From Ginglymostoma cirratum (Eukaryota), in NCBI GenBank assembly GCA_024137785.1, contig JAHRHZ010000085.1, positions 9,799,548-9,863,547 on the forward strand: a DNA stretch of 64,000 bases, in the 5' to 3' direction. This document shows, in pieces, positions 7,774 to 61,304 of this stretch. The notes below the pieces were generated by a model. That model saw nothing but the letters and a program-made list of their open reading frames with translations, did no database searches and was not told the origin of the DNA. The position numbers and the translations under genes are program-made. The first letter of the stretch is position 1. Every line of letters begins with the position of its first letter.

Positions 7774-10700
7774 ATGTCAGCGAGGATGATTTTTTTCTGC
7801 CTGATTCTACTTGAGTTTATTCTTGCTGGTACTTGCTGTTTTTTTGATTCACGGAACTGCTTTAATTAATTAAAGACTTTTGAAGCAGCTCTTCGTTCCA
7901 TTAACTAATCTTAATTCATCTATCCGGTTAAGAATTTATCTCTTCTATCTTTATGCCGAATATGACAGTTATCTGTTTTTTTCACTATGTTTCTGACAGC
8001 TGCGGCCCACACTTCGTTCAGTGTTACTCAAACGCCTAAAACAGTAACTGCGAACAGATGGGAAGACATTACCTTCTACTGTACCTCCTCCATTTTTCAG
8101 CAAAGTTCAAAGCCAAATGTAATTTGGTGGAAACAGGTTGGGAATGAATGTGTTCAGATGAAAGCCAGTGGTCGAAAACAATTTGGATTTGAAAATGAAG
8201 CAATAGCATTCCTTAACTTGCTGAGCGTTACTGTCCAAGATTCTGGAATTTATCACTGCACGGTGAATTATCAAGGAATAGGTCAAAGAAATGGAACCGG
8301 ATCCCAGCTATTTGTGCATGGTAAGTGAGAGCGACACTGTCTGAAATAATTTGAAATAACAAGATATTTTCCGATCGCTCATTTCATCAACATTGGCAGT
8401 TAAATCATGTCCGGCGATCATTTACGCAGAACCTTTGCTTGATATTTCTGTTCCCTTGGAAAAAAAAGAGTAAAATTAGACAATCAATATCACAGGTAGA
8501 AAACTGCAACGTCTATAAATATTAACAATTTACGCTATAATTCTAAAGACACCCTATACACCATGTGCATTTTATCGACATACAAAACTTCCAACGTACA
8601 TAGGCGACAAGAAACCGCAATGTCAGGCTATTCGTCCACAATTCTTAGTCCCTGGTATGCTATCGATGTCGTGTGACTACCCCCAATTATTCTTTCTGAG
8701 ATTGAAGATTCCAGAAATTAATTCTCACATTAATTTCACGTCATAATTTGAAAATCAGCTTGAACTTATTTCATGAAGAAAGGAATCGATGCAAAAGAAA
8801 TGCAGTTTGACAGATACAAGTGAGTAGAATCACTGACCTAGAATTCATAAAACAATACAGAGAATCTGTAGCTCCTGAGGTTCAACTGATTCAACTGATT
8901 CTCATTTGAAATGCCTTGTTTTTGAAATCCGACTGATACAGTGGTCTTGAGTTAATCAGCAATCTGCAGCTTCACCTCCATTACACACTTGCGCTTGAAA
9001 AAAAAACACAAGGGCAAACGAGCGCCATTTGTTTATTTGTCTAGCTCAATTTAATTAATTCTTTCAAATATGCTACATAATCATTTTTAAGCATTTTGTT
9101 ATTTTGTTCCGCTGAGGAAAGTCAAGTATTGGATTTGATAATTCAAGTAAAAGTGAATAAAAGCCGCGGCTTTGAGAGCTATGTGTTTAATTAACTGAAT
9201 CCATGTACATAAAATTAAGTAGAGAAGAAACTGCAATTTTGGGTATTGTAATTATAATAAAGCATAGCGTCTGAAAATCTGCCTCAAAGTTAACAATTTC
9301 TGATTTGTTCCAGTAACTTGGCTTTATTCCTTCTCTGCTTGCAGTTGCCCCAGTCCCACTGAAAATTACGCCCAAGCTACATGAAGAAAATTCGCTTGTA
9401 TCTTTGACCCTTCTGTGTGAAACAGCTGCATTTTATCCGGAGGATTTCACCCTCGCCTGGTATAAAAACGGCACCGAAACTACAGTCGGTATAAATACCA
9501 GCAAGGTGCAGAACAGCGAGGGACTGTATGAAGTATCCAGTTCTTTGGTTGAGCCTCTTTCTCCTTCAAGTAATCTCAAGTATACCTGTTCGATATCTCA
9601 CATCTCCCTCAGGACGCCTGCTGTTGTCACCCACAGTATTTCCACATTTGGTGGAATACAAAAAGGCGAGTTATGCTAATTATGAACAAAATGCCTCGCC
9701 CAATGCTTGCATTACATGGAGCTAATCCACGGTAATTTCGTGGAAATATCTCCTTTAAATGCATTAAATTAAGTTGAAATGTGTGTTAAGAAAGGTGCAA
9801 AACCTTACTGGCATCCAAATTGCTTTATTTATGGAGTTAGTATTATGTTCAGTAATGAGCTGTTCTATCCGTTTCTTACTTTTTGACCTTTTTTTGCCGT
9901 CGTTCATTGTCATTGTTTCCATGATAAAAATGCTTTATTCCTACCAGTGCCTACTTTCCTTGCACTGTTGCCAGGAGCTACATTGTTTTATTTGGTTTCG
10001 CTCTGCCTTCTAGCACTGCATTCCCCATTGGTTGTATCCAGGGCAGAATTCTAAGACTTATCCCTTGTCAAGTGGTATCTCCCACCCGGTCAAGGCAGTT
10101 CAGTTGGGATCAATATCACATATACCACAAAGCCTGTGGGATACCTTGACTTGTCTATAGTACGTCAGATTTAATTCATTAACAATTGGTCACTTTGGCA
10201 GCAGTTTGTCACGGCACAAAACAAACAATTAATCACACCTAGCCCATAAAAGTCCTTTGCTACGCAGTGTGTAGTCGATTTATTTGTATATGGTTCTTAA
10301 CCAATTGCCCCAGTTCTCATTTTGGTGCAGCTAGCATTGAAATCGTGCCGCTAATTTCAAAAAGGCATATGTTAAGAAGTGAGGAATGTCAAGAAGGTCA
10401 ACACCGTGGTCCACAGAGAATCAATCCATCTTGTAAGCCTACATTTCCAAAACAATCTTTCAAGATCCTTGAACCGACAATCTCTTTCAGAGATTGATTC
10501 AGAATTTGCATTTGTTGGAAGTAGAAGTCACTTCAACATTCAACTGAAATAATATCCTGCACTTCAGCTTTCTCATTGCCCTTCAGTACCGTGGTGCAAT
10601 TGAAAACACCATCATACTGTAAGCAAGAAACTACAGCAAGACTTTTTCAACTATCATCAGAAAATAATGTCCTCTTAATTTTGCAGATGAGAGCAATAAT

Positions 10701-12303
10701 TCAGTCGTCTTCTGGGCTCTAATTTCTATGGTGGTAGGATTTGCGTTGGGTGTACTAATGGCTGTAATTGCAAAGCGACATGGACTTCAGTCTAACAAAA
10801 GTAAGGTCTACTGTCAACTCATGATCTTCGGTCTAGTTGCAGTCTGAGGACAACAAGCGGGAGGGGTGTGGAGTAGTAGTGAAAGCGAAAAGATTTGAAG
10901 TTGAAAATGCAATGGGTTTATTTTTCAGCGCGCTCAGATTGTTCCAAATACATTTCATAACGCAGAAATGTTCACAAATTGGTGATCAACAAGTTAATTT
11001 CCAGTTGCATTAGGTTCCAGCATAAAAACTGTACTGTTCAAAGCAATTAATGAAATATACCGTGACAAACATCAAATTGGCACGTTGATTCTTCCGCCGA
11101 GAAATAATTGCTCCTTGAAGAACAGGAGGATTAGGAACAGATGATAACTATTCAATCCCATGTTGTTGGCTCTGCCTCGAGAAATATAAACATTGTGATG
11201 TGCCTCAACTGCGCATTCTAAGCCTCTTTTTCACTTTGAATCAGAAATGTAAAGCCTCGTTTTCCATATGAAAACTGGGCTAATATTTCTATCACTCAAT
11301 TTAATTATATTCTATTGATATACAGATAAAGAAGAATGCGCAAGGCAACCGGATCATCGTGACAAAGTGGTAAGTCCATTCCTTCAACCCAGTAGGTGTT
11401 TGCAATAAATTAAACCATTGCAAAAATGGAAGTAATATGTACTAATCACGTCAGAGTATTTTAAGTTTATTTGTTGAAGGACGTGTTCATCCAATGACGT
11501 TTGAAATACAGTTGGTACAATATTGTTATTGATAAAGAATTTTAGTTGAATTTTTAAAATCTCGTTGTAGCTATGAGAATGTTTCTAACTAATAACACTT
11601 TAGAAACTCAGTTATTCTTTAGTTTTGGACACAAATTTACTGTCCAATGCTGCTGCCTTTTGACAGTCAAATATTATGTTCCAGAGTGAATGTGAAGAAG
11701 CTTTGCTTGTTACACTAGCCACTGTGCATTAATATTTGTATGCGCAGGAATAAATCTGAAACGAGGATTCTGCAAGTGATCTCGTGCCCAGGTTAAATTT
11801 GTTCACTGCTTTTTGAAAGAATTGTTGAAGACATGAAACAGGGACTTAATGAAATATTTTCTTTTTGGTCCTTGCAGGTAGCCGTGGCTCAGGATGTGCA
11901 ATATGCTGCAGTCCATTTCAGCAGAGGCAAAACAGCTCCAAGACCCACGTTTGAAATAGAGAGAAGCATGTATGCTGAGGTAGGGCTGAGTAACAGAGAA
12001 AGAATTTAAGTCATCATTATAATATGGCGATTCAGGCTGTCGATGAGAACATTCACCTCTGTTGACACTGACTATGTGAGATATTGAAAGTTATTTGCGC
12101 GTACTTCTGGTGACCACTTTGCAGAAATCTTGTAAAAAACACATTAACAGTATCTCTAAATGCTGCTTTTACAGGGCCCACAAGACGCAATCGGTAATAA
12201 GGTGACGTACGCAGCACTAACGTTGAATAGTTCAGTGAAACCGGAGTTGCACCAGAATCCCAAAGAAGGCACAGAGTATGCTGCGTTGCAGGCTGGAAGA
12301 TGA
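7774..12303 (+). CDS. Gene A: non-rearranging VJ-C1-TM Ig-superfamily inhibitory receptor (SIRPalpha-like tail, NKp30/TCR-like V domain)
   Basis: Phase-consistent exons: leader 7774-7828 (MSARMIFFCLILLEFILA); V 8000-8320; C1 9345-9665 (GC donor) or 9345-9650 (GT donor); TM 10687-10800 (VVFWALISMVVGFALGVLMAVIA-KRH); cytoplasmic 11326-11369; 11878-12009 (VQYAAV, SMYAEV, stop; internal donor at 11980); 12175-12303 (VTYAAL, TEYAAL, stop). No internal stops. About 328 aa (ending in exon 6) or 361 aa (spliced to exon 7). Confidence 0.88.
8000..8320 (+). CDS. Gene A V-set Ig exon with in-exon J-like G strand
   Basis: SVTQTP...ITFYC...IWWKQ...QDSGIYHC...NGTGSQLFVH. Acceptor ctgacag, donor gtaagt, phase 1/1. 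Confidence 0.95.
9345..9665 (+). CDS. Gene A C1-set Ig exon
   Basis: LTLLCETAAFYPEDFTLAWYKNG...GLYEVSSSL...YTCSISHISL shows the C1-set signature (CxxxxFYP, W, Y-x-C-x-V/I-x-H). The 3' donor is uncertain (exon end 9650 or 9665). Confidence 0.92.
10687..10800 (+). CDS. Gene A transmembrane exon (no charged residue)
   Basis: ttgcag acceptor, 114 nt, about 23 hydrophobic residues then KRH, donor gtaagg. Same length as the TM exons of genes B and C. Confidence 0.85.
11878..12303 (+). CDS. Gene A tyrosine-motif cytoplasmic exons 6 and 7
   Basis: Two phase-0 exons, each encoding VxYxxV/L followed 23 aa later by S/TxYAxV/L. Confidence 0.8.
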
Positions 12304-15840: not shown

Positions 15841-17924
15841 ACTTTTGTGTTCACTTATTTTTGTTTTAAGGTCATAAACAGGCGATTTCACACATTATCA
15901 GGTAGATGCCGCTTTTCTAGCTGCAGGAAAACAGCTTGGGAAGTCGTCACCTGATCCAAGAGTAGAAGTTTCCATTACTACAGCTAAGAACTGTCAGGGC
16001 ATTTTAAGCATCCAAAATGGACAATTACGTATTGTCATCGTGCGGAATTAATCGAATTAGCTGTGTTGCTCTGTAGGCATTTTGCTTTGAATTCCTACGG
16101 AGTTTGGAGTAAAATGTTTTTTGTTATTTGCATCATTGATGAGCATGTTTGTGCACCTCTCTGTTTCTGTTAGATGTTCCATTGTTCATGAACTTTCACA
16201 AATAGTTTTGGAATGACTCGTGAGCTACGATCCAATTGATTCATTGTGGGACCGCTTAACTCTTTCTATTCATGCGCTCTCCACTTAATAACGCACATAC
16301 GATCCTGTAATGTTGTTTTTCCCAGTGGGTACAGTGTGTTAGGTAGCTTGTTTCCACTCCTGGCTTAGACCACTTTGTTGGACATAGCAACAGAATTGGT
16401 CGACTAAATTGATGACAATAATAGTGTCAGTGACATGCAGCACCATAATGTTATAGATTGTCATTAAAGTCAACATTAATGCATCGAGGAACACAAATGA
16501 CATTCCCTTACCTTTAATTGAAAGTCTTTTTACATGATACATAATATCCGTCACCGTCAAAGAATTATGAAGAAGCCCAGAGTAAGCTGAGCAATCAGAA
16601 GATTATGGAAATGTTTCTTTACATGGCAGAATTATACGCAAGGATATAGAATGATTCATCATTGGATGTAACTAGGATTCATTCACAGAAGTGCAACAGG
16701 TCAAATATGCGGCTGATTTCAAGCAAAAAAAATCGACTTTCCAACATTAACATGACACAATAGACGAATATTAAGCTCTGCAAACAAAGCACCATATCAG
16801 CATCTGCCATGCTGCAATCTACCTTCCATATCACCCACGCTTAGCGCTAGCTGGATTTTATGATGCTATCCGCTTCTCTTCAGTTTCTAATTGTTGATCT
16901 GTGATGAACCAAGAACCGGAAGTCAATTTCATGATCGAACTGTACTCTCTGCACGCTCTAGCTAACCTCATTAGAACTGGGGAGGAACGGGCAATGTGCG
17001 AGTAACAGCCAAGGTATTTTCGGCTGCTAAGGAAAGCACAACTTTTCTTCTAGAGTCGATAAGTACAAAATGGATTCCATAAATCTGCCTCCCAAATTTT
17101 ATGCTTTACGATTGAAATAAGTGACCATCTAACCTTCTTTATGTTAAGCTGTTGTCCAAATGCTAAATATATCAGGGTGGTGTTTATTGACTTTCAGCAA
17201 GGTAAATGCCCCTCAGTGCAGTTTAGCTCTCCCGAAACAACTTACCTGTCTTTCACAACTAATTGTCAGATGTCAATAATAAGGAAACTATTGGTGACGT
17301 CCTATATATTGAAATAACGTTAATTTCTGCTAGAATCGAAGTGGGAAGATTTCCTCATGCCTGAGCAATTTACGTAAGCTCAAAGAGAACAGGAAACCAA
17401 TTTATGAAGTAATTCCAGGTAATCGAAAATATTTACTGGAGGCATGTTTACAAGAAAAACTAGTCAAGCATGTTCACTGATATGGGTTAGGGAGGGAATG
17501 CTCTAGAAAGGTATTGGCTAAAGTTCTAAACAGACTTTTTGAAAGAACAGATGAATTTTACTTGGCAAAACCTTTACACTTTTGGCCAACCTGAAAGTTT
17601 CTGATTCATTCCAGAAAATATTTTTCCAACTTCAACGACAGTTTATCTTCGTATTATTACTGTTTTTTCATTAACGTGGCATTGATAATGAACACAATTC
17701 ACGCACCGCGTATCCTCTGTTCGGCTACATATTTGTGAAGGTAAAGCAAAGTGGAGTGTGTGGTGCAAAAGTTTCCAGTCTTACTATGACTGTTGATGTA
17801 ATTGATGCTGGCGGGCACCTTAAGACAGTCATGGCCGGCAGGTATAAACTACACCATCCTGCACAGGCCGTGCTTCTTCCAACGAACTGGAAACCTCATA
17901 AAGTCAATCCAAGGTCTTACTCAT

Positions 17925-18370
17925 ACAATCAGATTAGTACAGCACGGAAACAGACTCTTCAATCCAACTCTTCCATATCGACAATATATCCTAAATTAAT
18001 ATACTCTCATTTGCAAGCATTCGGCCCATGTCCCTCTAAATCCTTCGTATTCATTTACATATTTTAAATGTTATAATTGTATCCAACACGACCCCTGGCA
18101 ACTCATTCTTACCGACACCAACCTCTGCGTGCAAACGAATGCCCCCAAGTTCATTTTCAAATCTTTTCCACCTAACCATAAATTTGTGCCCTCTAGTTTT
18201 GGTCTCCCCTGCCCTCGGAAGAGAAGACCTTGACTGTTCACCCTTTCCAAGGCTCTCATGATTTTATAAACCTCTGTAAGGTCACTCCTCAGTTTCCGAT
18301 GTTCCAGGGAAAATAGCCCCAGCCTACTCAGCCTCACAGCTCGAACACTCTAATCGCGCGGCAACGTCCT
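17925..18370 (-). mobile_element. CR1 LINE 3' fragment
   Basis: RLSRLGLFSLEHRKLRSDLTEVYKIMR, the typical CR1 ORF2 C-terminus. Confidence 0.85.
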
Positions 18371-20180
18371 TTTAAATATTTTCAATATTAAATATTTTCA
18401 AGGCTTTGTTTTTCACAGCTTCTATTCCAGCCAGAATTTCGACACCATCTCTTAGCCAGGAAGTTTTTAAATCCTCCGGGTAAAAGGCAGCCGTTTTTAC
18501 GTTAGTATTTCATACAAGTGACTGAGAGCCCTTTAACAGGAATAGTTTTTAACAGGTTTGTGGAAATAGAAAATGTGGTCACATTTGTATGTCCGAGTAA
18601 TGTTAACCAGGGATGTTGTTCATCTTCTTCTTGTTTCATTTAAATTTTAAAGTTGTTCCAAGAATTGAGGCAAATTCTGACATGAGTTGAGCTTAGCAGC
18701 GATGGTTCCAATTAAATATCTCTCAAATATATCTGCCAGATCACATCACCATGCATATGGATTAGATCAATGTCTCGTTTTCCCTCTTATTGTCATTACC
18801 GTTTTAAAGGACTTTTTTTGTGTTTATTGAGAAAATAAAAACATAAGCCAATTCGAAGCATTTGATAAATTACAGAGCTTAGGTTGTTTTGCATGAATAT
18901 TGAGTTGACGGAGATATCTTCAGTGCCTGAATGGGCTTCAAATTAATTATGCAAAATTCACCATTTAAACTCAGCCAGTACAATGAGCACAAACATTTCC
19001 ATGTCTTGATGAAGCTTTCAGGTTATGTGATTTTCACGTGAGAAATACTTCCCACAGGGTTGAGTGGATTGAGGAACTGAGGGCTTTTGACATTTGTCAC
19101 CTCATGAAGGGGTATTATTGACAGTTGAGTGTTACTGGAGGCATCTTACCAGACTCTGAGCAGCGTGTGCTGTGATGAAATGCGTGGTGGAACCCGGTGG
19201 GTTGGTCATCCAAGGCCACATTCATCTTGCTGCAACATCCCCTTTTGCTGAAGCACCGTAGCAAGGGTAGCAAGGGTATTGAAGTCTCTCTGTGGGAATA
19301 ACGCAGCACCCCAACCAAAGAGTTCATTCATCAATGCATGCAATGTGAAAATATACCTTAACAAACAATGTCATAGAACGGAAATTTCTACTGTTCCAAG
19401 TGATAATGAACGATAAAGAATTTGCATTATTGTGGTCCATTCAGTAACAAATTAGGAAATGTTTGGAAAGTGGGATCAAATTGCCATCAAGTGATACATA
19501 CGTAACAATTATCTGATTACTTTCAGATTATCTCTGCGGTGCTTGCATCGGCTATAACTATGAAGTATTGAGCCTATGGTCAAATTGGCAGGTTACCACT
19601 TTCAATCCAAGTGATAATACTTTAAATCAGTCAGAAAGTTCAGCTGATAAGCCTTTTGTGGAGCAATTCTGGTGTCTTTATCTTGGAATCAGGCTGTCAT
19701 ATTTCGAAGCACAAACTGCTCAAACTTAATTGAAGTCAGCAAATATAAAGAAGAGTTATATTCAGTTATTAGCTTTGATTTATTTGTATTAGGGAAAATG
19801 ACTGTGCAAATGAAGGTTTGATGGACCTGTTCAAATCATGACAGTGCCAAAAGCAATGAAGCAATGAAGCAAAAAAGCCTGTTGATCCCATTGGCAGAAA
19901 TTCCAAGAATCAGAAGCTCTGACTGTGGGAAATATGAAACAAAGCAACAGCCACATTTTCAAAAATCATAGTTAAGACTTGTGCGCACTGATGGCCAGTG
20001 ATGGATACAGATCAACTCTTGTTTGGAAGCAGTAAGGACATCAGCAGTGTGAGTTAACTCTGTATTTGCAAATCTAATGGCTTTTTAAAAATCTTTACAG
20101 CACCGATACACGTGATTTCAGAAGGGGAATAACCACAGAAACGATAACATTACATTGGACAATCGAGGCTCAAATTAAAA

Positions 20181-20211: not shown

Positions 20212-20501
20212 TAAATATCTCTTTGTCATCAATCTTAGCAGTTACCAACTCGTAGAAACTGCCAGCGCAGTGTGTTGAATGCGTTGCTGAAATGTAAGCG
20301 AGGATGAATTTTCTCCATTTGACTCTACTTGAGATTATTCTTTCAGGTAAATTAATTGAAAGAAAACCGCTTTAATTGATAGAAGGCTTTTGAAGCCATT
20401 CATTTAAATAATCTTATTTCCTCTGTCTGGACAAGAATTAATTCTTCTATCTTTATGTTGAATATGACATAGTTGCTTTTACTTCACTATGTTCCTGACA
20501 G

Positions 20502-20816
20502 CTGCAGACTCATTCAGTGTTACTCAAACGCCCAAAGAAGTGACTGTGTCCAGATGGGAAGACATTACCTTGTACTGCACATTCCCCATCTCTCAGCACT
20601 CTTCAAAACCAAAGATAGTCTGGTGGAAGCACGTTCGGAATGAACATATTCAGTTAAGTACCAGTGGCAGAAAACGATTTGGTTTTGAAAACGAAACAAC
20701 GGTTTTCTTTAATTTGCTGAGCGTTAGTATCCAAGATTCTGGAGTTTATTACTGCGCAGTGATTTATCAAGGAATAGGACAAATAAATGGAAACGGTTCT
20801 GAACTAATTGGGCAAG
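20502..20816 (+). CDS. Gene B VJ-type V exon (intact frame)
   Basis: SVTQTPKEV...LYC...WWKH...QDSGVYYCAVIYQGIGQINGNGSELIG. Canonical AG/GT. Confidence 0.9.
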
Positions 20817-21846: not shown

Positions 21847-22217
21847 TTGCCCCAGTCCCACTGAAAATTATATCCAAGTTACATGAAGAAAATCCAACCC
21901 AATATTTGAGTATTTTATGTGAGACAGTTACATTTTATCCGGAGAATTTCACCCTGACTTGGTACAAAAACGGGATAGAAACTGACCGAGGAATAAAAAC
22001 CAGTAAAGTGGAGAAAAACGAAGGGCTGTATGAAATATCCAGTTCTTTGGTCGAGACTCAACCTCCTTCGCATAAAACCAAGTTTACATGTTTGGTATCT
22101 CACATCTCCCTCAAGACGCCTGCTGTCATCACACGCACCATTTCTACATTTGATGGAGTCTGCGGCACTTTAAATTGGTATTGGTCTTGCATGTATCATA
22201 TAAACTTTGTTCTCTAA
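21847..22217 (+). CDS. Gene B C1 exon, reading through to a stop
   Basis: SILCETVTFYPENFTLTWYKNG...FTCLVSHISL...STFDGVCGTLNWYWSCMYHINFVL*. Confidence 0.85.
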
Positions 22218-22929
22218 TGTCCAGGGTGTTGTGATTTAATACATTACAATTTGATTATTGTGTAAATACTTTGACCCTGCGTGAAATGATATTTTTTGTG
22301 TCACTTCGTCCGTAGATATCCTTTATATTTTCATATAATGAATGCCTAAACACAGTTTATTTATTTGTGAAGACTTGCTCACTGAATCCATCAGTCCAGA
22401 ATTTGATGTGGTTAGCCAAGAAAATGCTGGTGAAATCATTTCTCTAATTTCAAGAAGTACAGGGGCAATAAAGTAGAGGAATAAGAAGTCAACTCGACGT
22501 GCAACTGAAGCAATATTTGGTAACTCAGCTTTTTAATTGATCTTCCATAGCAACGTGCATCGAAAATGCCATCATATTTTAAGAAAAGAATTATAGTGGC
22601 CATTTTTTCAACAATCATAAGCAAATGATGCCGTCTTAATCCTGCAGAGAGTATCAACAATTCACTCGTAATCTAGTCTTCAGTTTGCAAAGTGGTTGCC
22701 TTCACGTTTCTTGTAATACTGGCCATAATAGGAACGTGCAACGTACGTGAATATATCCAAAGTAAGATCTACTTTCACCTGTTTATTTTGCACAAAGCCT
22801 ATGTTCATTTGACAGCTGTGGAAAACGAATGGAATGATGAGAGGATGCCTTATTGGGGAGAATTTGAATTGACTTAAAATTGAAAAATAATTGTTTTTTA
22901 TTTTCTTCACGAACTTGGATTGCTCCAAA

Positions 22930-23440: not shown

Positions 23441-26400
23441 CAGTTCGCAAAAAAATAGTTATCAAATGTATGTTGTTCTCCCACGTGTTAAATTCCAAGC
23501 AATTTTCACGTTTCAACATGACAAATGAAATATACCCTGACAAACATGAAGTCGGTAATTTGATTATTCCGCAGAGGAATTATTGCTCCTTGAAGCTTTG
23601 GAGGAAAGGTGCAGATTTCGACAATGACTTCCCTCTCCTCTACACACTCATTTTGCGCTTGGAAACTGAGTCAATAAGTCCATCGCTCAATGTAATTATA
23701 TTTTATTGATTTGTAGATAAAGAGGAATGCACAAGGCAACAAGACCATTGCGAAAACATGGTAAGTTCATTCCTTCATCGCGTTATGGGTTTCAAATATC
23801 TGGCCAATTGCAATAATAGGAGAAATATATGCTAATAAATCCAGGACATTTTAAATCTATTTATTGAAAAACACATCATACAGTATTAGTGTGTGCTTCA
23901 AAACCACGTTTGAAATGTATTTGGTACAGACTATTTTGTTGACAAAGGATGGAAAACTGATTTTTTTAAAAAAAACGAACGTCCTCATACCTGTGAGAAT
24001 GTTTCTTGGTAATAAGACTTTTATAGATTGAGTCATTCTTTATTTTTGAAGAGAAATTTACTATTTAAAGCAGCGATTTTAAATTTAACATTGTGTTGTC
24101 GCATGACAGTGATGATGTTTAATTTGTTATAATGAACACTGTACATGGAGTATTATGGTTCTTGTTTTCACAGGAAGCTGTGGTTGAGGTCTCCTGTGAT
24201 AGACTTCAGCAAAGACGGGAGAACTCCAACACGTGCATTTAAAATAGAGAGAAGCACATATGCTTATGTAGGGCCTAGCATAGAATGAAAAAATCAAATC
24301 ATGAGTCAGGCTGGCAACAAAGACATTTGCTTCTATGGACATTGTCAATGTGATATTTTGAAGTTTATCTTCGTGTTCTTCTGAAGAATAATTTTCATAA
24401 AGTCTAGAAAAAGATCAAATAACAATATTTCTAAATATTATCTTTACAGTTCCCACAAGTTGAAACTGGTGATAAGATGACTGTTTGTGTGAAGGAGGCC
24501 CATAGTATGCTTGAGCTGCAGACTGGAAACAAAATGAAGTAACAGAAGATAGATACGCCCAAGCAAAAATAACAAGCCATAAAAAATGCAGAAGATACTC
24601 TTCGGGCATGTACTGCTTGTATTCTTTTGTTCCTGGAACTTCAGCCCTGCACAAGCTCATCTCTCTGCATATAATGCATTAAAATTTAGTATCAGACAAC
24701 TATAGTTACTACCTATCACTACGCTACACAATTATTCTTTATTTAGTTGCTTTATAGAACTCTAGAGACCTGCATTGAAAGCTTATTGAAAGGTCACTTT
24801 GCATGAAGTTACAGACTGTCTCTAATGTTTGCTTACTTATTCTCATTTGACATCAAGCCTATCTGCATGCAGACAGTATCGATGGCTTGCCTTGCTTTGT
24901 ACTGTACTTTCGGAGCCATACAGCTTATCCTACAGGTGAACAGTTCATACCCAATGGGGCAAACAACCTGATATATGCAATGTGCGACTTCAATCTCACA
25001 CCTGCACCACATGCCAACAGTGAAGGGTCATACATATATCATGTGCTGCCAGCAAGTAGCCATGTAGCAAAGTTTTAGGGGAGAAGTCCTCAGCTAAGTC
25101 CATGGATGTATCTATCAATTATAAAAGACCCAGACATCAAATTAAGGGCAACCTGTCCTTCCAGTCCAAGTATACAGAAACAGTCAGGTGCTAGTGGAAT
25201 GGTGTTAGACAGGGTCTTCATTCCAGGTACTGGGTTATGATCAGTCCTGAGTCTCCTTTCTGCTTAGTTGAGGGGTTAGGGTAAAGGCCAGATGAGAAGG
25301 CAATGATTTGGCAGGAGGTCCACAGTCACGATCATACTGGTGATTAAATGGGAGGCGTGGGAAGTGAGTGAAGCTCCTATGAAGACACCTGGCATGGCTG
25401 CTTCATATGACAAGCAGGGGGCAGAAAGTGGGCACTTACAGGCTGATGTTGATGGGTAGGTTGGAGACTGTGGAGGTGGAAAGCCTATGAGGTTCATGAG
25501 GTGAGCAATCAAGATCATAATTCAGATGTTCAGGGGCTCACACACACATCCAAGTGGAACCTCGAAGCCACTGGCGCAGGATTGGTCATTGACATCTTCC
25601 GTCCTGTTGGAATTCTAACGTGTGCAATCTGAAGTGTAAAGACAGCAAGTGCATCTGGAGAAGGTAGCCAAGAATATTGACCTTTGATGGAGGGGGCTGC
25701 AGGACCCACCAAAGTGAATCTCTTTAACTGGAAACCATATTGCATGCAAGTCCTTAAACTGTATGGGACAGATGCCTTGATCACAGGTGATGGTACTGCT
25801 TTGACCTGATGTGTGGAACAAACTTCACTGTCCTCGATATCGATGAACAGCTAATTTTCCTTCAATAGGTTCCTCTTTTTGACTTTCTTTCCCTTCTTCA
25901 ATGTCCTGGTGCTGTCTCTGGTAACACAGCTTTGTGGATGGAACCTGGTTAAGAATGGATTCCGTTGACCATGAATATTTGAGTCGGGCAAACCTAAGTG
26001 CATTTATACCTGATGTAAATAACGTTTTGACGGTATTTTTGTAGCTTGAGTAGCTTAATAGCACTGTAATAATTATTTAAATTAGAAAAATCATGCATGA
26101 CGTTTCAGTCTAAAGGATACCTTGAAATGAAATATCAACACAGATGGTACTCACTTTTAATACAATATCCCCGCTCATAATGTTAACGAAGAGAGAAATT
26201 CAAGCTAAATGAAGCATTTGCATGTCCTAAAGCCATCTGAATATATTTGACACATACACTCTAGTGAAATATATTTGAAACAATCTCATCATAACAATTT
26301 GTTGGAAACAGTATTGAGATCATTTTCATCACAGCTGTTCTTCACTGAATGACAGTTTCCAATTAAGTTTGTAGAGTTTCTGTTGTGGGTCTGATACAAA

Positions 26401-46700: not shown

Positions 46701-48830
46701 ATGTGAGGTGAGTTCGCTATCATCAGTTTTTTTTCTAGTGATAAATCTCAAACCTAATTTATCACACACAGTCGAAATACTCCTTTCCCTGAAACAATGA
46801 GACTTACCACACACAGTCAACAACGACCCACTTCCAGCTCCAGTGATGATTTTCTGATGCTTTATTTAACAATAATACATTCCTGAGTCTGCAGCAGTGA
46901 CATTGAGAAAATGAAGTGAGCTCCTTCCTTCCTATACATGAAATAGCTGTCTTTTGCTGGGTTTCAGAAATGATTCTGCATCGCGTCTCCACCAAAATAC
47001 TTCAGGAGCATTTTCAAATGTGAGAAATGTGCAGAACATGGAAACATTAGCACCTCTGATGGTCTTCAAGTGTTTGGGAAAATGATATACTTTGCCTGAT
47101 GTTACTTAAGTGGCTGCCAGAAAAAAAAAGCAAAGCAGTGATAAAAGTTGCATACCTCGGAGAAAGTACTGTATGACACGAAAAAAAAAATGCAAAAAAG
47201 ACAATGAAGAAGCGTGCACATCTAATTGGAGAGTATACAATCCTGCAGTGAATTACAGATGAAATTCATATGAAATAAAAATATCGGATTTAAGCTTTTC
47301 TGATGAGCAGCAAATAAATTTTAATGTTACCTGACAATACTATAATCAGAACAAACTTGAGTTGATTTACAGTTCTCACCGGCATGTTGTAGCATTAAAT
47401 AAAGTTAATTATCAACTTCCTTAAAATCGAGTGGCACGCTCTAAATGGTTGGTTTGAGAAATGAATTGCGTAGATAAGTATAGGAAGTGTGTGGCCAAGG
47501 CATATAATCTATCCTGGGATCCTGAGCATTGTGGAAGTAGATTGTTCCCTTCTGTTGCTCCCTGAGAAGCTTTTTGTCTGAAATGAAATTCTTTTTACCA
47601 GTTCATGTGGCACTTTGTTGCAACAATCTTCTCTATTGACACAGAGCATTGAATATTGTCTCAATGGTGAAAGTGTCATCTCTGTTTGCAGGTATGGGCA
47701 GCTGTCAAAGGGATATTTGGCCCTGGGTACTCAGCGCTCTGTGTGACCCTGATATTGAACAGTGTTCCTGCACAATTTATTTCAGAAATCGTAAGATAAC
47801 AATTATATTCAGAATCGTGTTCGTTTTAAGCACACAATTCACTGCTATAGGCACTATGCTAAAAGTCCTGATGCAAAACAAGCAAGTTTTACAGAACTGT
47901 TTGTTGATACCTGCAGACAAAACTGCAGTTGAAAGCTAACGAGTTTAATCTTTATTTAGTTGATTGCAACAGGGAAGCTGATTTCAACAGAATAAAAAAC
48001 ATTCATTTTGGCACCATCATGCAGCATGTTTTATTTCTCCAACTTCCTTTGCTGAGTGCAAATTGATCCTTATCAGAATTCTAACATTATTCAGAAGCCT
48101 TCCTTCTAACCACATCCATCTGAACTTACTAAAATTTTGGTAAGAGCAGGGCTAGTGTCAGGGACGTCAAATGTGATAGCAGTTTAGTTGAGTTAAGTGA
48201 AGAGAATAAAAATATACAATTCTTAACTCATATCTGAAGTACGCAAGTGAAACCCAGTTTCCCGTATAAAACAGTACACAAGACTTTCCTGCTCAATCTT
48301 TCCCATCGCCTGAGACGTGGTGACATACAGGTTGAAACCACCACCAGTCCACTATCTCTTATGAGAAAGCAGCCCTATGGTAAGGCTATGCAACTTAACC
48401 TCTTACCAAATATGGCAAATTTAATTAATGAATGCTTTAGACAGCAGAAGAGTAATTGCAGGCTAGTTTAATACATGTACAAATTAACAGATTGTAAATT
48501 GAACACTTTCAGCAAACATATCTTTAGTTTGCTGGTGGTTTTTGAGTCAATCGATTTGCCACCAAATCCTTGAAGTTTACTGACTACAGAATGCATCACT
48601 TTTCTTCTTCACAATACGTGCCACATTCAACAATTTTCGGTTAGCACTGGGGCCACATACAGACCAGATGGGAGGTGAGCCGTTTGTTTAATTGTTACTT
48701 TATTCTTGAGTAGCTACAACGATTGAAATAATCCTTTTTTTTTTAAAATAACATTTCAACAGCTGCCGTGTCAGGTTAACAGTGAGCAAATATTTTCATG
48801 TCTTGTCATGTTCACAAAATGAATCATCAG
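43790..48830 (+). repeat. Old tandem duplication of non-coding sequence (43790-45360 versus 45660-45980 plus 47680-48830)
   Basis: Paired blocks tatttggccctg...tgatat (44185/47714), tgtcttgtcatgttca-like (45341/48799), ttaccagaacaa (43999/45840). Confidence 0.75.
44655..44746 (-). mobile_element. Short Penelope terminal-repeat insertion with hammerhead core, flanked by a 15-bp direct repeat
   Basis: aacatttctcaggag at 44640-44654 and 44747-44761. The paralogous site near 48083 lacks the insert. Confidence 0.8.
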
Positions 48831-52482: not shown

Positions 52483-52507
52483 TCTCTAAATGATTTGGAG
52501 GAAAATG

Positions 52508-56220: not shown

Positions 56221-56303
56221 TGAAAAAGGAAGAAACCTCAACCTATTTTTTCAGTCATTGCACATTTGCTTTTGCAGCAGAGAATCAACAATTTGAACAA
56301 AGA

Positions 56304-59300
56304 ATGGCACCGAGTACCATGCTTCTTTGCCTAATTTTCCGGGGCATCATTCAGACAGGTGTCAGTTGTTTTTTTTTTAATCGTTTGTTCATTTTCCCGA
56401 TTTATTTTTACCTATACAGCATACGAAGTACTTGATGCGTTCATCTCGCTAACTGCAATTTATCAATCCAGATACGTTTTCACCTTCATGCCTTATCTAA
56501 TGCTGTTAATTTACGTTTGATTATATTTCTGATAGCTTCGGACCACACTTCATTCACCGTGTCTCAAGCACCTAAAGAAGCGAATGTATCCATAGGACAG
56601 ACTATCACCCTCTACTGCATTTTTCCGCTGTCTCCAGACCAAACTTGGGTACGGGTATTATGGTGGAAACATGGCGAGAATGACTACTTGCGTACAAGCA
56701 GAGACAAGAGAAGGAAGTTTGGCATGGAAAATAAGGCAAGCGGTTTCTTTCAGCTGCTGGAAGCAACAATCCAAGACGCTGGAATCTATCACTGCACCGT
56801 GATCCGTCAAGGAGAAGTTAGAGGAAACGGAACAGGATCACGTTTAAGCGTTTATGGTTAGTTTGAAATATAGGAGAACAAGACTTGCTACATTATATTA
56901 ATCAGGGATGTGAAGTGACTATTCATTGCATTTTTTTTCAGATAATATATGTTAATGTATTTTACAGCGCGTTAGTTGGAAAATCATTGCTCTTTGCATT
57001 AAACGGTATATAGATACACAAAGCCTCAAGCAGTGACAGTGTGAGGATTTGGATGCTAGTTTTACTGCTGGCTTTTGACTGATTCACTCAATAATGGAAA
57101 GGTTAGCACGCGTTTGGGTGTCACCTCACTGACGTTCAAATAATATAACACAGACAGGCTGTGTTGCTGAAACATCCTGATGTTCAAATGAATAAAATAT
57201 ATTACATCAGTTGTCATACTCTGACAGACAGCTATGCCGGCACAATTAAAACTTTTCATTTTTCACCAAGACCATGTACATCATTGCACCTGAAATGCAC
57301 AAAGACGTGGCCATCCAACTTGTTCACCGAGGCTTACACCTCGAAATGATGTATATTATATGTTTGTTAGGAAGTTATTGCCTCTCATGCAGGGAAGAAT
57401 TCTAAGCTGAAACTTTACAGATTGACAATGTGCCATTCAATTCTAATGTGTGATATGGGCAAGGCATGGCAATTAAAAAAGATAGGAATTTAGATTGAAG
57501 ACACTCTATAGTGAAAAAATAAAGCAAATTAAATTGTAAATTAAATACTATTTTTGTTCTTTCTCCATAGCGTGCATAACTTGACTATATATTTGTTTTC
57601 ATTCTGTGATTTGCAGCGGCCCCAACACCACTAACCATTGTCTCTGGGCTATCTGAAGGGAATTCTTCGACGTCTCTGACTCTAAAGTGTGAAACGGCTG
57701 CATTTTATCCAGAAAATTTCACCCTTATTTGGTATAAGAATGGTGTTGAAACTGCATTTGGAATAAGTACCAATAAAGTCAAAAACACCGAAGGACTGTA
57801 TGAAGTTTCCAGTTCATTGGTTGTGACGCAACCTGTCCTGATCGACATGAATTATAGCTGTTCAGTATCTCATGTCTCCCTCCAGGCGCCAGCTTTTGCC
57901 ACCCATACAGTGTCTAAATCTAATCTAGGTATGACAGCAACAACTTAAGAAGTATACGCATGTAGTATTGAATTCATAGATACAACACAGGCTATGTTGT
58001 AATGAAGATAGTCCATGGAAGATCGTGAGAAATATCAAGTGCATTAAATCCGTGTTTTTGGATAGAATTCAATCTTGCCGTACCAAAACTGATGTGTTTC
58101 TAGATACTGAAATAGGCTTAGTTCAACCAGTCCTTACTTCTAAATTCCTTTATTGCAGACGCAGCAGTAATAAACAAAGCTTCTACTTCTTATTCTAATA
58201 TTTGCTTACTCGACTGTGGCTGGTATTTTTATAATCTGGGTTTTATGCTTACATTGTGTTATATTTTATCCTTGTCCACCTTTTCCTTCTTGTATGAGGA
58301 CTATCATCGGCAGCACCAGGCATTCTTTTGCGAGATGTGAGTTGCGATACTGCCCCAAGTCGACTGCTTCCTGCGCAGAAGTCTGAAATTAATCATCTGG
58401 TTAACTTCAATTACCAAGTCCTCAAAATGTTTAATGGGGATGTAATTCATGATTTCATTTAAACTGTGCCTGCAATTCGCTACAGTATGCTCTATTCAAT
58501 GCATTGCGTTTTCAATGAGCTTCAGTGTGAAAATCAATTAGCTTCTTTTTTGTACCCAATTCTCTCATGGGTTGCAGACGTCGCTGCCAAGACCAGCATT
58601 TATTGCGCATTCCTAACTGGCATTGAATTGAGCGATTCATTAGTTCATTTATGAGGGTAGATAAGAGACACAACATTTGTGTTAATTCCTGCTTGCCTCC
58701 AATGTTGTTTGGAAAGCTGACCAGTAGTGTAAAGGGACCATAACAGCATTGGCTTAGTCCTCACACGACTAAGGTTGCCAATGTAGGACATTTTTTTTAA
58801 TCGATCCCCCTGCTTGAGGCGTGGTCACCTTCAGTTTAAACAACCTCCAGAGTGATTTCTCCCGAGTGATGGAACAACTCTACAGTCTGATAAATCTATA
58901 GTGACTTTATTGTACCTGCAATGCCATTCTGGTACTGGCAAATCTAGTTAAGATACCAAAAGGTGATTTGTAATCGATTGCTGCATTTCAGAACTTTTGT
59001 TTTTAAGGAAGAAATGCTGCTCAAAAATTCTCCAAATTTCTTTCTACTATAAGGAATTCTAAGAACAAGTACAAGCATTTTGCTAATGGAAACTTGATTT
59101 GTCTCGCATTTTAAATCCCCATAAAACTTGAAACCCTTAAACCATAGGCCTATTCCAGGTATGAAAAGAAATTTCACATTTTCGAGGAAGAATTTACTTC
59201 AAGTAGGTTGGCTACGAATAGTACTTCGAATTTATTTATTCTTACTGCAGTGAACTAAAATGCGGAGTGAAACTGCCAGTGTAAACAATTAAATGCCTAG

Positions 59301-61304
59301 GAGCCAAATTTTGTTTCAGGTTCTGCCACTTCTTGTTCATTTGTGGGATTTAGGTGTCACTGACTGGGCCTACATTTATTATGCATCTCCAGTTTCCCTT
59401 TCGAAGGTGGTAATGACCTGCCTTCTTGATATACTGCAATCTATTTGCTTTATGGACCCACTTAGCCATTAGGAGGGGCTTTTCTAATAATTTTGTTTTC
59501 TTCTAATAATCGTGCAGGCAATGATCAGAAGCCACGTTATTTTTGGATTCCAGTTTTTGCGGTAGCTGGCAGTGCATTCCTTGTTTTTGTGATTGTCTTT
59601 GGAGCGTGCTCTCTGCTGAAGAATAATAAAGGTAAAATCTACGTTAAGTCTTTGATGTTATATCGATCATCAGAATGAAAGTCAGCTCCTGGGTAACAGA
59701 AATGGAAATGAAGTTTAAGAAGAATTGAAGTTGTTGAAAATGTCTTGTTTTTTTTATTTGGGGGTGTGGTTGGAGGGCTGGCAAAGACTGTCGAAAATGT
59801 GCTTATAACATAAAGCCTTTCCATTTTCAATCAAAATGGAAATAATCACCAAGATTTGTTTAAAAATACAGCTTTGTGATCTAATGAATGTAAGATACCT
59901 TGATAAAGCATTTCCAAAACCAAAATTCACAGCTACAATTAGTTTCAATGTGCGATTGTGATGAGGGCATGGGTGGCAGTGTATTTTAGAAACTGATGTA
60001 GAGGTAGACCGTAAACCCAAAAGCAAAATCATCATGTCTAGTCCTCCACTTAAAATGAAATCTCCTGCTGCACTACTGTAGCCCAGATTTCGCCAGTTTT
60101 CGAAAGGTAACCTTGAATTTAAAAAAAAAAACTTGCTCATCATTATAAACGTTAGTATTTAAATGTCCTCACATTGCAGACTTAAAAACCGTGTTAGGCA
60201 TTTTTCGGACTTTGACATTGCAATCTCTGACATTAAATCTGTGTAACTGTTTCTTTTTACATCACATTTCATTCGTTTCTGGGTAAAGACGACCCTGTAG
60301 CAGGAGCGAACCAAGGTGGGGAGATGGTATGTCAATTCATTGATGTTGAAATACTTGTATCAAGAAATAATGGTATCGTGGAATATTAATTTCACAATTA
60401 AGGCAGAACAGTTTAGCTCAGTTTAGTAAAAAATATTGACAAGCCTCATTAAGATAATCAAGTCAGACATGGAAGTTATTTAAAGTTGAAATTGCTGGAG
60501 TAACGTCACAGGCCTGCCTGCATCTGTGCAGAAAGAGCAAAGTTAACGTTTCGAGTCCAGTGACTTTCTTCAGAGAGCTTTAGATTTATTTTATGCCTAT
60601 TTATTTGCTACTTAGTGTGTTGCTGTGGAACTCTGATACGTTATAAGGAATTAAAGTCACTAATTGCACTGAAAATATTCTTATGTGACAATTTTTTTCT
60701 ATCCTTTATAATTGAAAGGAAATTTCAATTCATGACACTTTGCTTGATGTAAACATTCCCATGGCACTCATGTTGTGTGAACTTTGATAGTTTATTTATT
60801 TGGAATAGCGTCCCGACTCTTTCACATATGTTTTACGGTCGAAGAACTATGATTTGCACAAGGAAGCTGCTAAGTACAATGGAGTTGCCAACCAAAAAAC
60901 ATTTTTTTTTTGTCACTAATGCAGATAGGATCTTCTGAGGTCGTGCATTATGCTGTGTTGGAGTTGAACAGAACAACAAAAATTCCAGGGTGCAAACTTA
61001 AAGAGGTGAGAAATGTGTACACTTAAGTAGGTATGAGTAATGGAGCAGAGAAACAAAGTGTAGCATCATCATTCGTGGGAAAGGTCAAGATAAATTCATA
61101 CAGATTTTCCAGTATATTGCCTCGAAAATCATTTGATCATCTGTTGAATGCTTTGAAACAGCATTTCGAAAAATGTGAAAAACGTCCTTTTAACAATATG
61201 TTCAAACAATGGTCTTTCAGCATCAACAAAGGGTAACTGGTGAGGATGTGACATACGCGATTGTGTCCGCGACTTCCTCGGGGAAAACAGGAAAATGCAC
61301 CTAA
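56304..61304 (+). CDS. Gene C: divergent VJ-C1-TM ITIM-bearing paralog with a partly eroded tail
   Basis: Leader 56304-56358 (MAPSTMLLCLIFRGIIQT); V 56536-56856; C1 57617-57928; TM 59518-59631 (YFWIPVFAVAGSAFLVFVIVFGACSLL-KNNK); cytoplasmic exon ending 60326 (ancestral acceptor at 60281-60282 reads GG; in-frame alternatives at 60289, 60301, 60304); exon 6 from 60925 (VHYAVL; TAA at 61024; donor GAG/gtgaga at 61006); exon 7 61221-61304 (VTYAIV, then a frameshift before TQYAQL). Confidence 0.8.
56536..56856 (+). CDS. Gene C VJ-type V exon
   Basis: FTVSQAPKEANVSIGQTITLYC...WWKHG...QDAGIYHCTVIRQGEVRGNGTGSRLSVY. 321 nt, as in gene A. Confidence 0.93.
57617..57928 (+). CDS. Gene C C1 exon (missing from the supplied ORF track)
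   Basis: Hand translation: APTPLTIVSGLSEGNSSTSLTLKCETAAFYPENFTLIWYKNG...GLYEVSSSLVV...YSCSVSHVSLQAPAFATHTVSKSNL. ttgcag acceptor, gtatga donor. Confidence 0.92.
59518..59631 (+). CDS. Gene C transmembrane exon (uncharged)
   Basis: 114-nt phase 1/1 exon with a hydrophobic helix followed by KNNK. Confidence 0.85.

What the first reader, a model, noticed from the sequence alone, without database searches (positions are those of the whole stretch)
7774..61304. Tandem family of non-rearranging, antigen-receptor-shaped (VJ-C1-TM) immune receptors in a cartilaginous fish
Seen: three paralogs with an identical exon/phase plan. The V exon contains both cysteines and the J-like G-x-G-S G strand in one germline exon with no RSS, followed by one C1-set domain, a TM and a tyrosine-motif tail. 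Known: V-C1 with a J motif is the TCR/Ig light-chain architecture, and C1-set domains are largely limited to Ig, TCR, MHC, beta2m, tapasin, SIRP and B7H6. The F-G region (YYCAVIYQGIGQINGNGSEL) resembles NKp30 (YVCRVEVLGLGVGTGNGTRL), while the tail resembles SIRPalpha. Inference: this could be a little-described NK/myeloid receptor family combining an NKp30-like V, one C1 and a SIRP-like tail, close to the proposed pre-RAG antigen-receptor ancestor.
Basis: partly seen in the sequence, partly recalled or inferred. Interest (0 to 1): 0.9.

Follow-up and report, generated by a model that had tools for sequence, protein, structure and literature searches.

The report
Shark SIRP-like VJ-C1 inhibitory receptor cluster
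The window holds three tandem shark genes for non-rearranging receptors shaped like one antibody or T-cell-receptor chain with an inhibitory tail; one is shown to be expressed, one is decaying, and they belong to a large SIRP-like family of cartilaginous fish that I found annotated only by pipelines.

Summary
Three + strand paralogs (7774-12303, 20304-~24600, 56304-61304) each have a split leader, a single exon with both cysteines and a J-like GNGTGSxLxV strand, and a C1-set exon. No RSS occurs anywhere in the window.

They are not three equal genes.
- Copy 1 is intact (7 exons, 361 codons). Public RNA contigs confirm four of its six junctions, including a GC-AG intron after C1, and show an isoform that skips the TM exon.
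- Copy 2 is decayed: poor donor after C1, TGG>TAG in the TM exon, an 8-nt deletion removing an ITIM, and a degenerate last exon.
- Copy 3 is open through V, C1 and TM, but its tail model is unresolved.

The N gap (27607-27706) lies in an interspersed repeat between genes and touches no exon.

The family is large and all named members are chondrichthyan (sharks, rays, chimaera). It has paired inhibitory (ITIM/ITSM) and Arg-in-TM forms, and RefSeq names it inconsistently, most often "SIRP-alpha-like". SIRP-alpha is the nearest known family by full-length profile and by language-model features. A specific NKp30 likeness of the V domain was not supported, and family members in catshark appear to lie off the MHC chromosome that carries the annotated NCR3 genes.

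First-stage notes of this scan list similar clusters elsewhere in this genome. Verdict: a new variant of a known kind, of moderate to high interest.

The parts
7774..7828 (+). Copy 1 leader exon (MSARMIFFCLILLEFILA, ends in phase 1; split leader)
   Evidence: ATG and GT donor read. Matches the N-terminus of the Stegostoma ortholog P0152.
8000..8320 (+). Copy 1 VJ exon (both Cys, WW-K, DSGIYHC, NGTGSQLFV; phase 1 to 1)
   Evidence: Pfam V-set. An RNA contig of run X1 covers 8021-8320 and stops at the exon end. AF2 model has mean pLDDT 92.
9345..9665 (+). Copy 1 C1-set exon, ending at a GC donor (AAAG|GCGAGT)
   Evidence: Pfam C1-set E 6e-11. RNA joint 9663(+2) to 10685(+2) gives a GC..AG intron. 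93% identical to Stegostoma P0001.
10687..10800 (+). Copy 1 stalk and uncharged TM exon (114 nt, phase 1 to 1); skipped in one RNA contig
   Evidence: X1 contig includes it. X9 contig joins 9665 directly to 11326.
11326..11369 (+). Copy 1 small cytoplasmic exon (N-KEECARQPDHRDKV; phase 1 to 0)
   Evidence: RNA joints 10800|11326 and 11369|11878. Homologous to KEECTRQPDDRDKV of P0152.
11878..11979 (+). Copy 1 tail exon with ITIM VQYAAV and SMYAE
   Evidence: RNA joints on both sides.
12175..12303 (+). Copy 1 last coding exon (ITIM VTYAAL, ITSM-like TEYAAL, stop TGA 12301-12303); 3'UTR continues past 13500
   Evidence: RNA contigs cover 12173-12309, 12348-12552, 12620-12943 and 12935-13500.
20304..20346 (+). 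Copy 2 leader exon
20502..20816 (+). Copy 2 VJ exon (holds the quoted YYCAVIYQGIGQINGNGSEL)
21847..22164 (+). Copy 2 C1-set exon. The position homologous to the GC donor reads G|GCACTT (poor). Read-through ends at TAA 22215-22217.
22648..22761 (+). Copy 2 TM-exon homolog with TGG>TAG at 22674-22676; a Lys lies in the hydrophobic stretch
23717..23760 (+). Copy 2 small cytoplasmic exon homolog; splice sites intact
24174..24267 (+). Copy 2 tail-exon homolog with an 8-nt deletion that removes the first ITIM and shifts the frame. The last-exon homolog (from about 24450) is degenerate.
   Evidence: coordinates approximate.
56304..56358 (+). Copy 3 leader exon (MAPSTMLLCLIFRGIIQT)
   Evidence: with coordinates read from the sequence.
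56536..56856 (+). Copy 3 VJ exon
57617..57928 (+). Copy 3 C1-set exon with canonical donor G|GTATGA
59518..59631 (+). Copy 3 stalk and uncharged TM exon (114 nt)
60289..60326 (+). Copy 3 candidate linking exon (phase 1 to 0; DDPVAGANQGGEM); unverified
   Evidence: Best candidate in a splice-site and ORF scan. No RNA data.
60925..61026 (+). Copy 3 tail exon with ITIM VHYAVL. It is 102 nt like copy 1's, but the last codon is TAA. An upstream donor at 61005/61006 could bypass the stop.
61221..61304 (+). Copy 3 last exon (ITIM VTYAIV, stop 61302-61304). The ITSM-like TQYAQL lies in another frame just downstream.
46803..47102 (-). Pseudo VJ exon of the same family with two in-frame stops
17838..18497 (-). 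Relic C1 exon split by an inserted repeat
27607..27706 (.). Assembly gap inside an interspersed repeat, between genes

Best explanation
The window holds part of a tandem cluster of germline-joined (non-rearranging) VJ-C1 type I membrane receptor genes. They belong to a large paired-receptor family found throughout cartilaginous fish. Its closest known relatives, in architecture and signalling tail, are the SIRPs.

Copy 1 encodes a signal peptide, a V domain with a built-in J strand, one C1-set domain, an uncharged TM and a four-tyrosine tail (ITIM, Y-A-E, ITIM, ITSM).

Inferred mechanism: the fast-evolving V domain binds a cell-surface or pathogen ligand. Src-family kinases then phosphorylate the tail tyrosines. 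SHP-1/SHP-2-type phosphatases are recruited and damp activation of the leukocyte carrying the receptor. Family members with an Arg in the TM and a short tail would give the opposing activating signal through an adaptor.

A weak GC donor after C1 and the skippable in-frame TM exon allow soluble V-C1 forms alongside the membrane form.

Copy 3 is a more divergent, older paralog with at least one ITIM. Copy 2 is a decaying duplicate: a pseudogene, or at most a secreted V-C1.

Shown here: gene structure, domain types, absence of RSS, splicing and expression of copy 1, and the family's distribution and its paired TM/tail types. Inferred: ligand binding, phosphatase recruitment and cell type.
For: - Exons, phases and motifs.
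- Domain types: V-set and C1-set.
- No RSS anywhere in the window.
- RNA contigs join 9665|10687 (GC-AG intron), 10800|11326, 11369|11878 and 11979|12175. A second run joins 9665|11326, skipping the TM exon.
- Stegostoma RefSeq ortholog P0152 (363 aa) has the same exon order. P0001 (247 aa) is the GC-donor read-through form.
- A V-profile search of 1.84 billion representatives gave 117 hits below 1e-10. All 100 or so proteins that carry a source name come from Chondrichthyes, 17 species in all, and in each species where more than one was named they share one chromosome-sized contig.
- Of 59 members with a TM, 34 have ITIM/ITSM tails and 16 have a charged residue in the TM core (13 Arg, 1 Lys, 1 Glu, 1 with two Arg), nearly all with short tails.
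- Full-length family profile against PDB: UrIg2 ranks 2nd, SIRP-alpha 4th and SIRP-gamma 10th of 11,030.
- The two nearest named Atlas clusters are SIRP-alpha-like and SIRP-alpha, at 0.97 and 0.96.
- dN/dS is 0.23-0.49.
- Between copy 1 and its Stegostoma ortholog, V is 79% identical and C1 93%.
Against: - No tetrapod SIRP sequence was available here, so no tree places the family next to SIRPs. SIRPs have two C1 domains; these genes have one.
- Neither the V-only sequence search nor the structural search lists SIRP V.
- A 2026 survey dates the human SIRP family to Tetrapoda (PMC13262535). True orthology would therefore be a new claim.
- Ligand, cell type and phosphatase binding are untested.
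- In the one poly-A raw-read run only 6 reads mapped.
- The paper on the nurse shark NCR3 family (Kinlein et al. 2021) could not be read, so overlap with that described family is not excluded.
Confidence: 0.72

Rival explanations
1. These are members of the shark NCR3 (NKp30) family already described in nurse shark (Kinlein et al. 2021), so the finding is known biology.
For:
- Some family members or isoforms are V-TM without C1. One Heterodontus V-TM isoform has the same V as a V-C1 form.
- The Flajnik group lists multi-copy NCR3 genes in sharks.
- The key paper could not be read.
Against: - Papers from that group describe NCR3 as a single VJ exon gene and introduce UrIg as the novel VJ-C1 gene.
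- NCR3 genes of white shark and catshark lie beside AIF1/PRRC2A/DDAH2 on the MHC chromosome. The catshark members of this family sit on a 198.8-Mb contig, and one has a gene ID (LOC119970986) far outside the ID block of the MHC chromosome.
- None of the family proteins that carry a source name is called NCR3.
- No protein close to copy 1 from its own species appeared in a word search with the ortholog.
- NKp30 is absent from the leading PDB matches by sequence and by structure.
Confidence: 0.15
2. They are surviving non-rearranging antigen-receptor relatives (of the UrIg/UrIg2 or PRARP kind) whose V-C1 chains pair as homo- or heterodimers like TCR or Ig chains, rather than SIRP-like monomers.
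For: - Split leader, a single VJ exon and C1, as in UrIg2.
- The C1 exon's best PDB hit is UrIg2, at E 4e-18 summed over three domains.
- V is structurally nearest IgNAR V and TCR V-beta.
- Foldseek aligns the ectodomain model to light chains and TCR beta.
- The Stegostoma ortholog has a Cys in the membrane-proximal stalk.
Against: - There is only one C domain, against 3 in UrIg and 9-11 in UrIg2.
- The stalk Cys is absent from all three window copies and from most relatives.
- ITIM/ITSM tails and Arg-in-TM partners are the hallmark of paired innate receptors.
- Dimerisation was not tested.
Confidence: 0.08
3. The cluster is a set of decaying pseudogenes without present function.
For: - Copy 2 has four independent defects.
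- There is a pseudo V exon and a split C1 relic.
- Copy 3 has a stop at the ancestral exon end and a frameshifted last exon.
- Read counts in the poly-A run are very low.
Against: - Copy 1 has a complete open frame across seven exons.
- It is spliced correctly in two independent runs.
- It has a conserved RefSeq ortholog and dN/dS below 0.5.
Confidence: 0.05

Closest known systems
SIRP family (SIRP-alpha/beta/gamma; signal-regulatory proteins)
   Same: - N-terminal V domain with a J-like strand, followed by C1-set domain(s), a single TM and a tail of four tyrosines arranged as two ITIM/ITSM-type pairs.
- Paired inhibitory members and members with a basic TM residue.
- Best non-antibody PDB matches, together with UrIg2.
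- Nearest named Atlas clusters.
- The most frequent RefSeq name for tailed members.
   Different: - One C1 domain instead of two.
- The V domain is not specifically SIRP-like in sequence or structure searches.
- The family is greatly expanded and all named members are chondrichthyan.
- Synteny with the SIRP region and CD47 binding are untested.
- The literature dates SIRPs to tetrapods.
NKp30 / NCR3, including the shark NCR3 family
   Same: - A non-rearranging VJ-type V exon.
- An N-glycosylated G-strand motif.
- Multi-copy in sharks.
- Activating relatives carry an Arg in the TM.
   Different: - A C1 exon is present.
- The window copies have uncharged TMs and ITIM/ITSM tails.
- The family appears to lie off the MHC chromosome in catshark.
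- NKp30 is not among the leading matches.
UrIg and UrIg2 (elasmobranch non-rearranging antigen-receptor-like genes)
   Same: - Split leader.
- VJ encoded in one exon.
- C1-set constant domains.
- UrIg2 is the top PDB hit of the C1 exon.
   Different: - UrIg has 3 C domains and UrIg2 has 9-11; there is one here.
- UrIg and UrIg2 are single genes in the MHC and the antigen-receptor complex respectively. This is a multigene paired-receptor family with ITIM tails.
Ig light chains and TCR chains
   Same: Overall V-C1 chain shape, the J motif, and exon phases of 1-1.
   Different: No RSS, and V and J are fused in the germline. There is an inhibitory signalling tail. No evidence of pairing.

Membership tests
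SIRP family | V domain followed by C1-set domains (V-C1-C1 in mammals) | tested here: inconclusive
   V-set plus one C1-set exon. A second C1 is absent in all three copies and in most relatives.
SIRP family | Cytoplasmic tail with four tyrosines in ITIM/ITSM-type motifs (inhibitory member) | tested here: met
   Copy 1 has VQYAAV, SMYAE, VTYAAL and TEYAAL. 34 of 59 relatives have such tails. Phosphatase binding was not tested.
SIRP family | Paired activating members with a basic TM residue and a short tail | tested here: met
   15 of 59 TM-bearing relatives have Arg or Lys in the TM core (one more has Glu), almost all without tyrosine motifs. No such copy is intact in this window.
SIRP family | Sequence or profile relationship to solved SIRP ectodomains | tested here: inconclusive
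   The full-length profile ranks 2wng (SIRP-alpha) 4th and 4i2x (SIRP-gamma) 10th of 11,030, with one stretch spanning V plus C1. The V-only profile does not list SIRP V.
SIRP family | Conserved synteny with the SIRP locus; CD47 as ligand | not testable with these tools
   The window holds only these genes and repeats.
NCR3 / NKp30 | Ectodomain made of a single VJ-type domain without a C domain | tested here: not met
   A C1-set exon is present and spliced into the mRNA.
NCR3 / NKp30 | Location in MHC class III next to AIF1/PRRC2A | tested here: inconclusive
   There are no flanking genes in the window. Indirectly, catshark NCR3 is on NC_052158.1, while catshark family members are on a 198.8-Mb contig with a distant gene-ID block.
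NCR3 / NKp30 | V domain specifically similar to NKp30 | tested here: not met
   NKp30 is not among the 60 best PDB sequence matches of the V profile, nor among the 50 best structural matches, all at Z 13.6 or higher. A weaker similarity is not excluded.
UrIg / UrIg2 | VJ exon with split leader followed by three or more C1 domains | tested here: not met
   The split leader and VJ exon are present, but there is a single C1 exon.
Rearranging antigen receptors (IgL, TCR) | Separate V and J segments flanked by RSS | tested here: not met
   V and J are contiguous in one exon, and no RSS occurs in the window.

The most novel reading that the evidence does not exclude
This family is the cartilaginous-fish descendant of the pre-RAG VJ-C1 receptor lineage and a true sister of the tetrapod SIRPs. 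That would move the origin of SIRP-type paired receptors to the base of jawed vertebrates and provide a living multigene model of what antigen-receptor chains were before the RAG transposon split a V exon.
Probability: 0.15. Interest if true: 0.85.

Novelty: new variant of a known kind. Interest (0 to 1): 0.58.

Why it matters
C1-set domains joined to a VJ-type V domain are the signature of antigen receptors, and few non-rearranging genes share that layout.

A large, expressed family of this kind, with inhibitory and activating forms, was found across chimaera, sharks and rays. I found it only as automated annotation under a dozen unrelated names.

The family bears on three questions:
- How old SIRP-type paired innate receptors are. 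The literature I could search places SIRPs in tetrapods.
- What the germline VJ-C1 precursors of Ig and TCR looked like.
- How sharks regulate innate leukocytes.

It also gives annotators one consistent name for genes now labelled MHC class II beta-like, tapasin-related, Ig lambda-like or B7-H6-like.

Tried and rejected
- **Spliced protein not searched.** Exons were searched singly by reference, and the full-length RefSeq ortholog P0152 served as proxy.
- **Papers not held.** Kinlein 2021, Flajnik 2012, Ohta and Flajnik 2015, Ohta 2019 and the UrIg 2023 paper could not be read.
- **Supplement search.** Gene IDs of family members were not found in the stored part of the MHC paper's supplement.
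- **Word-indexed searches.** Searches with P0152 and P0014 found only chondrichthyan relatives and no tetrapod SIRP. No reference-anchored tree could therefore be built.
- **Atlas search with the V exon alone** gave only generic V-set clusters.
- **Literature searches** for NS344823, PRARP, and SIRP plus shark found no description of this family.
- **Canonical donor for copy 1.** I first looked for a phase-1 GT donor after the C1 exon and considered A|GTATTT inside the exon. I rejected it once the ortholog and the RNA showed a GC donor.
- **RNA for copies 2 and 3** could not be examined, because only one reads call was allowed.
- **No complex prediction** was run, because I do not claim that any proteins bind.

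Full report
**What is in the sequence**

A six-frame scan and tblastn with the V and C1 exons found three V exons and three C1 exons on the + strand. They also found a minus-strand V exon with two stops (46803-47102) and a minus-strand C1 exon split by an insertion (17838-18497).

Pfam calls the V exons V-set (E 2.5e-8 to 6e-8) and the C exons C1-set (E 6e-11 to 5e-10). Each V exon is preceded by a short leader exon that ends in phase 1, the classic split leader.

Each V exon runs in one open frame from the end of the signal peptide, through both cysteines, to a J-like strand (NGTGSQLFV, NGNGSELIG, NGTGSRLSV). It ends at a phase-1 donor. A scan for heptamer-spacer-nonamer signals on both strands found none, and no bare heptamer lies within 100 bases of any V exon.

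Copies 1 and 2 align through their introns at about 70% identity. Copy 3 aligns only in exons. dN/dS between copies is 0.23-0.49 in both domains.

**The gap**

The N run at 27607-27706 lies 1.97 kb beyond the last block shared by copies 1 and 2, and 28.6 kb before the leader of copy 3.

Both of its flanks are copies of one interspersed repeat. They match the flanks of the other gap (5889-6521) at 100% over 40-81 bp, and match 44648-44748 and 52500-52747 at 82-97%. The ORF that crosses the gap comes from that repeat.

No exon is adjacent, so frame continuity does not arise. What stays unknown is the true distance, and the join, between copy 2 and copy 3.

**Copy 1 is a complete, expressed gene**

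The best database relative is a zebra shark RefSeq protein, P0152 (363 aa). It is 79% identical in V and 93% identical in C1. Its sequence showed that the C1 exon continues to ...FQK and then joins the stalk/TM exon. In copy 1 that requires a GC donor (AAAG|GCGAGT) at 9665/9666.

Public RNA contigs laid on 7600-13500 confirm this:
- One run (X1) has a contig joining 9665|10687 (GC..AG), 10800|11326, 11369|11878 and 11979|12175.
- X1 also has a contig that ends exactly at the V exon end (8320), and 3'UTR contigs that run past 13500.
- A second run from another study (X9) joins 9665 directly to 11326. That skips the 114-nt in-frame TM exon and predicts a soluble form.

The leader-to-V and V-to-C1 junctions were not covered by any contig.

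The zebra shark annotation also has 247-aa products that read through the GC donor (P0001). That would be a second route to a soluble V-C1.

The seven exons sum to 1086 nt. The TM is uncharged. The tail reads VQYAAV...SMYAE / VTYAAL...TEYAAL.

**Copy 2 is decayed**
- Its V and C1 exons are open.
- The donor position after C1 reads G|GCACTT.
- The TM exon has TGG>TAG at 22674-22676.
- The first tail exon has an 8-nt deletion that removes the first ITIM and shifts the frame.
- The last exon has lost its tyrosines.

**Copy 3 is open through leader, V, C1 (canonical donor) and TM**

Its tail is unresolved:
- A phase 1-to-0 linking exon is required. I can only propose 60289-60326.
- The 102-nt ITIM exon (VHYAVL) ends in TAA where copy 1 has GAG, although an upstream donor at 61005 could bypass it.
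- In the last exon, VTYAIV is followed by a stop. The expected TQYAQL motif sits in another frame, next to G4/A4 runs. That could be a real frameshift or an assembly error.

**The family**

A profile of the three V exons was searched against 1.84 billion representative proteins. It found 460 hits below 1e-3 and 117 below 1e-10.

About 70 representatives are V-C1 proteins of 220-450 aa. A few are V-TM forms, at least one of which shares an identical V with a V-C1 form from the same species.

All 100 or so proteins that carry a source name (some 60 clusters named) come from cartilaginous fish. The 17 species named are:
- Sharks: Stegostoma, Chiloscyllium (2 species), Hemiscyllium, Mustelus, Scyliorhinus, Heterodontus, Heptranchias.
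- Rays: Hypanus, Hemitrygon, Narcine, Mobula (2 species), Pristis.
- Chimaera: Callorhinchus.

In each species where more than one member was named, they share one chromosome-sized contig.

RefSeq names are inconsistent. They include SIRP-alpha-like (the most common), SIRP-beta-1-like, tapasin-related-like, MHC class II beta-like, NCR3LG1-like, Ig lambda-like, CD276 homolog and uncharacterized.

Of 59 members with a TM, 34 have ITIM/ITSM tails. Sixteen have a charged residue in the TM core: 13 with Arg, one with two Arg, one with Lys and one with Glu. Nearly all of these have short tails without motifs. This is the pattern of a paired inhibitory/activating receptor family.

In V and C1 trees, copy 1 groups with its zebra shark orthologs and copy 2 is their sister. 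Copy 3 groups with Mustelus, Scyliorhinus, Heterodontus, Heptranchias and batoid genes. Chimaera genes form their own expansions. The family therefore predates the split between chimaeras and elasmobranchs.

**What it is like**
- **C1 exon.** Its best PDB hits are UrIg2, Ig heavy chains and SIRPs.
- **Full-length family profile.** UrIg2 ranks 2nd, SIRP-alpha 4th (one stretch spanning V and C1) and SIRP-gamma 10th of 11,030 matches. The others among the 60 shown are almost all antibody chains or antibody constructs.
- **Atlas.** The language-model search with the ortholog returns SIRP-alpha-like and SIRP-alpha as the two nearest named clusters.
- **Ectodomain model.** The AF2 model of the ortholog is confident over the two Ig domains: pLDDT is mostly above 90 across residues 31-220, and the mean over the whole 363-residue protein is 75.7. 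Foldseek aligns it to Ig light chains and TCR beta over about 220 columns.
- **V alone.** It is a generic antigen-receptor-type V. A V-only profile finds TCR beta, VNAR and CD79b as the best single-domain matches. The all-against-all structural search is led by skate IgNAR V (Z 16.3), TCR V-beta and CD79b.
- **NKp30 and SIRP V** appear in neither V list.
- **Tail.** From my own recollection, not tested here, the SIRP-alpha tail is built from the same unit (xTYAxL, about 17-20 residues, then xEYAxx) as the tails of this family.

**Is it already known?**

The Flajnik and Verissimo papers I could read describe shark NCR3 as a single VJ exon gene. They present UrIg as the novel VJ-C1 gene.

Their supplement places NCR3 genes beside AIF1, PRRC2A and DDAH2 on the MHC chromosome of white shark and catshark. 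The catshark members of this family lie on a 198.8-Mb contig. One has a gene ID (LOC119970986) about 4,400 below the MHC chromosome's ID block. This suggests, but does not prove, a different chromosome.

A 2026 survey dates the human SIRP family to tetrapods. Full-text searches found no description of this family. The nurse shark NCR3 paper was not readable, so overlap with it remains the main risk to novelty.

**Other notes from this scan**

First-stage notes, all unchecked, report similar VJ-C1 genes on the same piece of DNA at 128 kb, 179 kb and about 7.1-7.3 Mb before this window, and on other pieces of this genome. The window is therefore one part of a multi-locus family.

**Verdict**

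The window holds a real, partly intact and expressed cluster of non-rearranging VJ-C1 inhibitory receptor genes. They belong to a SIRP-like paired-receptor family found across cartilaginous fish.

The mechanism is inferred from motifs only: ligand binding by V, tyrosine phosphorylation and phosphatase recruitment, with soluble forms produced by TM-exon skipping or read-through.

Noticed in passing
9665-10687 and 10687-10800: The intron after the C1 exon of copy 1 uses a GC donor. RNA contigs from two studies show both the TM-containing form and an in-frame TM-exon-skipped form. The zebra shark ortholog also has annotated read-through products. This suggests a regulated switch between membrane and soluble forms.
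   Followed up: partly
8000-8320 versus 9345-9665: Between copy 1 and its zebra shark ortholog, the V domain is 79% identical and the C1 domain 93%. That would fit faster, possibly ligand-driven, evolution of V. No orthologous DNA was available for a dN/dS test.
   Followed up: partly
61221-61350: In the last exon of copy 3, the ITIM (VTYAIV) and the expected ITSM (TQYAQL) lie in different frames, on either side of G4/A4 runs. This is either a real frameshift or an assembly indel.
   Followed up: no
5889-6521, 27287-27750, 44648-44748, 52500-52747: One interspersed repeat flanks both assembly gaps with 100% identical stretches and recurs twice more in the window. It is the likely cause of both gaps.
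   Followed up: partly
49590-52036 and 4312-5809: Retroelement remains. One ORF has an OSK/SGNH-like esterase domain (E 3e-7), as in some LINE ORF1 proteins. Another has a weak GIY-YIG match (E 4e-4, below Pfam's cut-off), as in Penelope-like elements.
   Followed up: partly
22648-22761: The TM homolog of copy 2 has a Lys in its hydrophobic stretch, the type of residue found in activating family members. A stop codon lies five codons upstream of it.
   Followed up: partly
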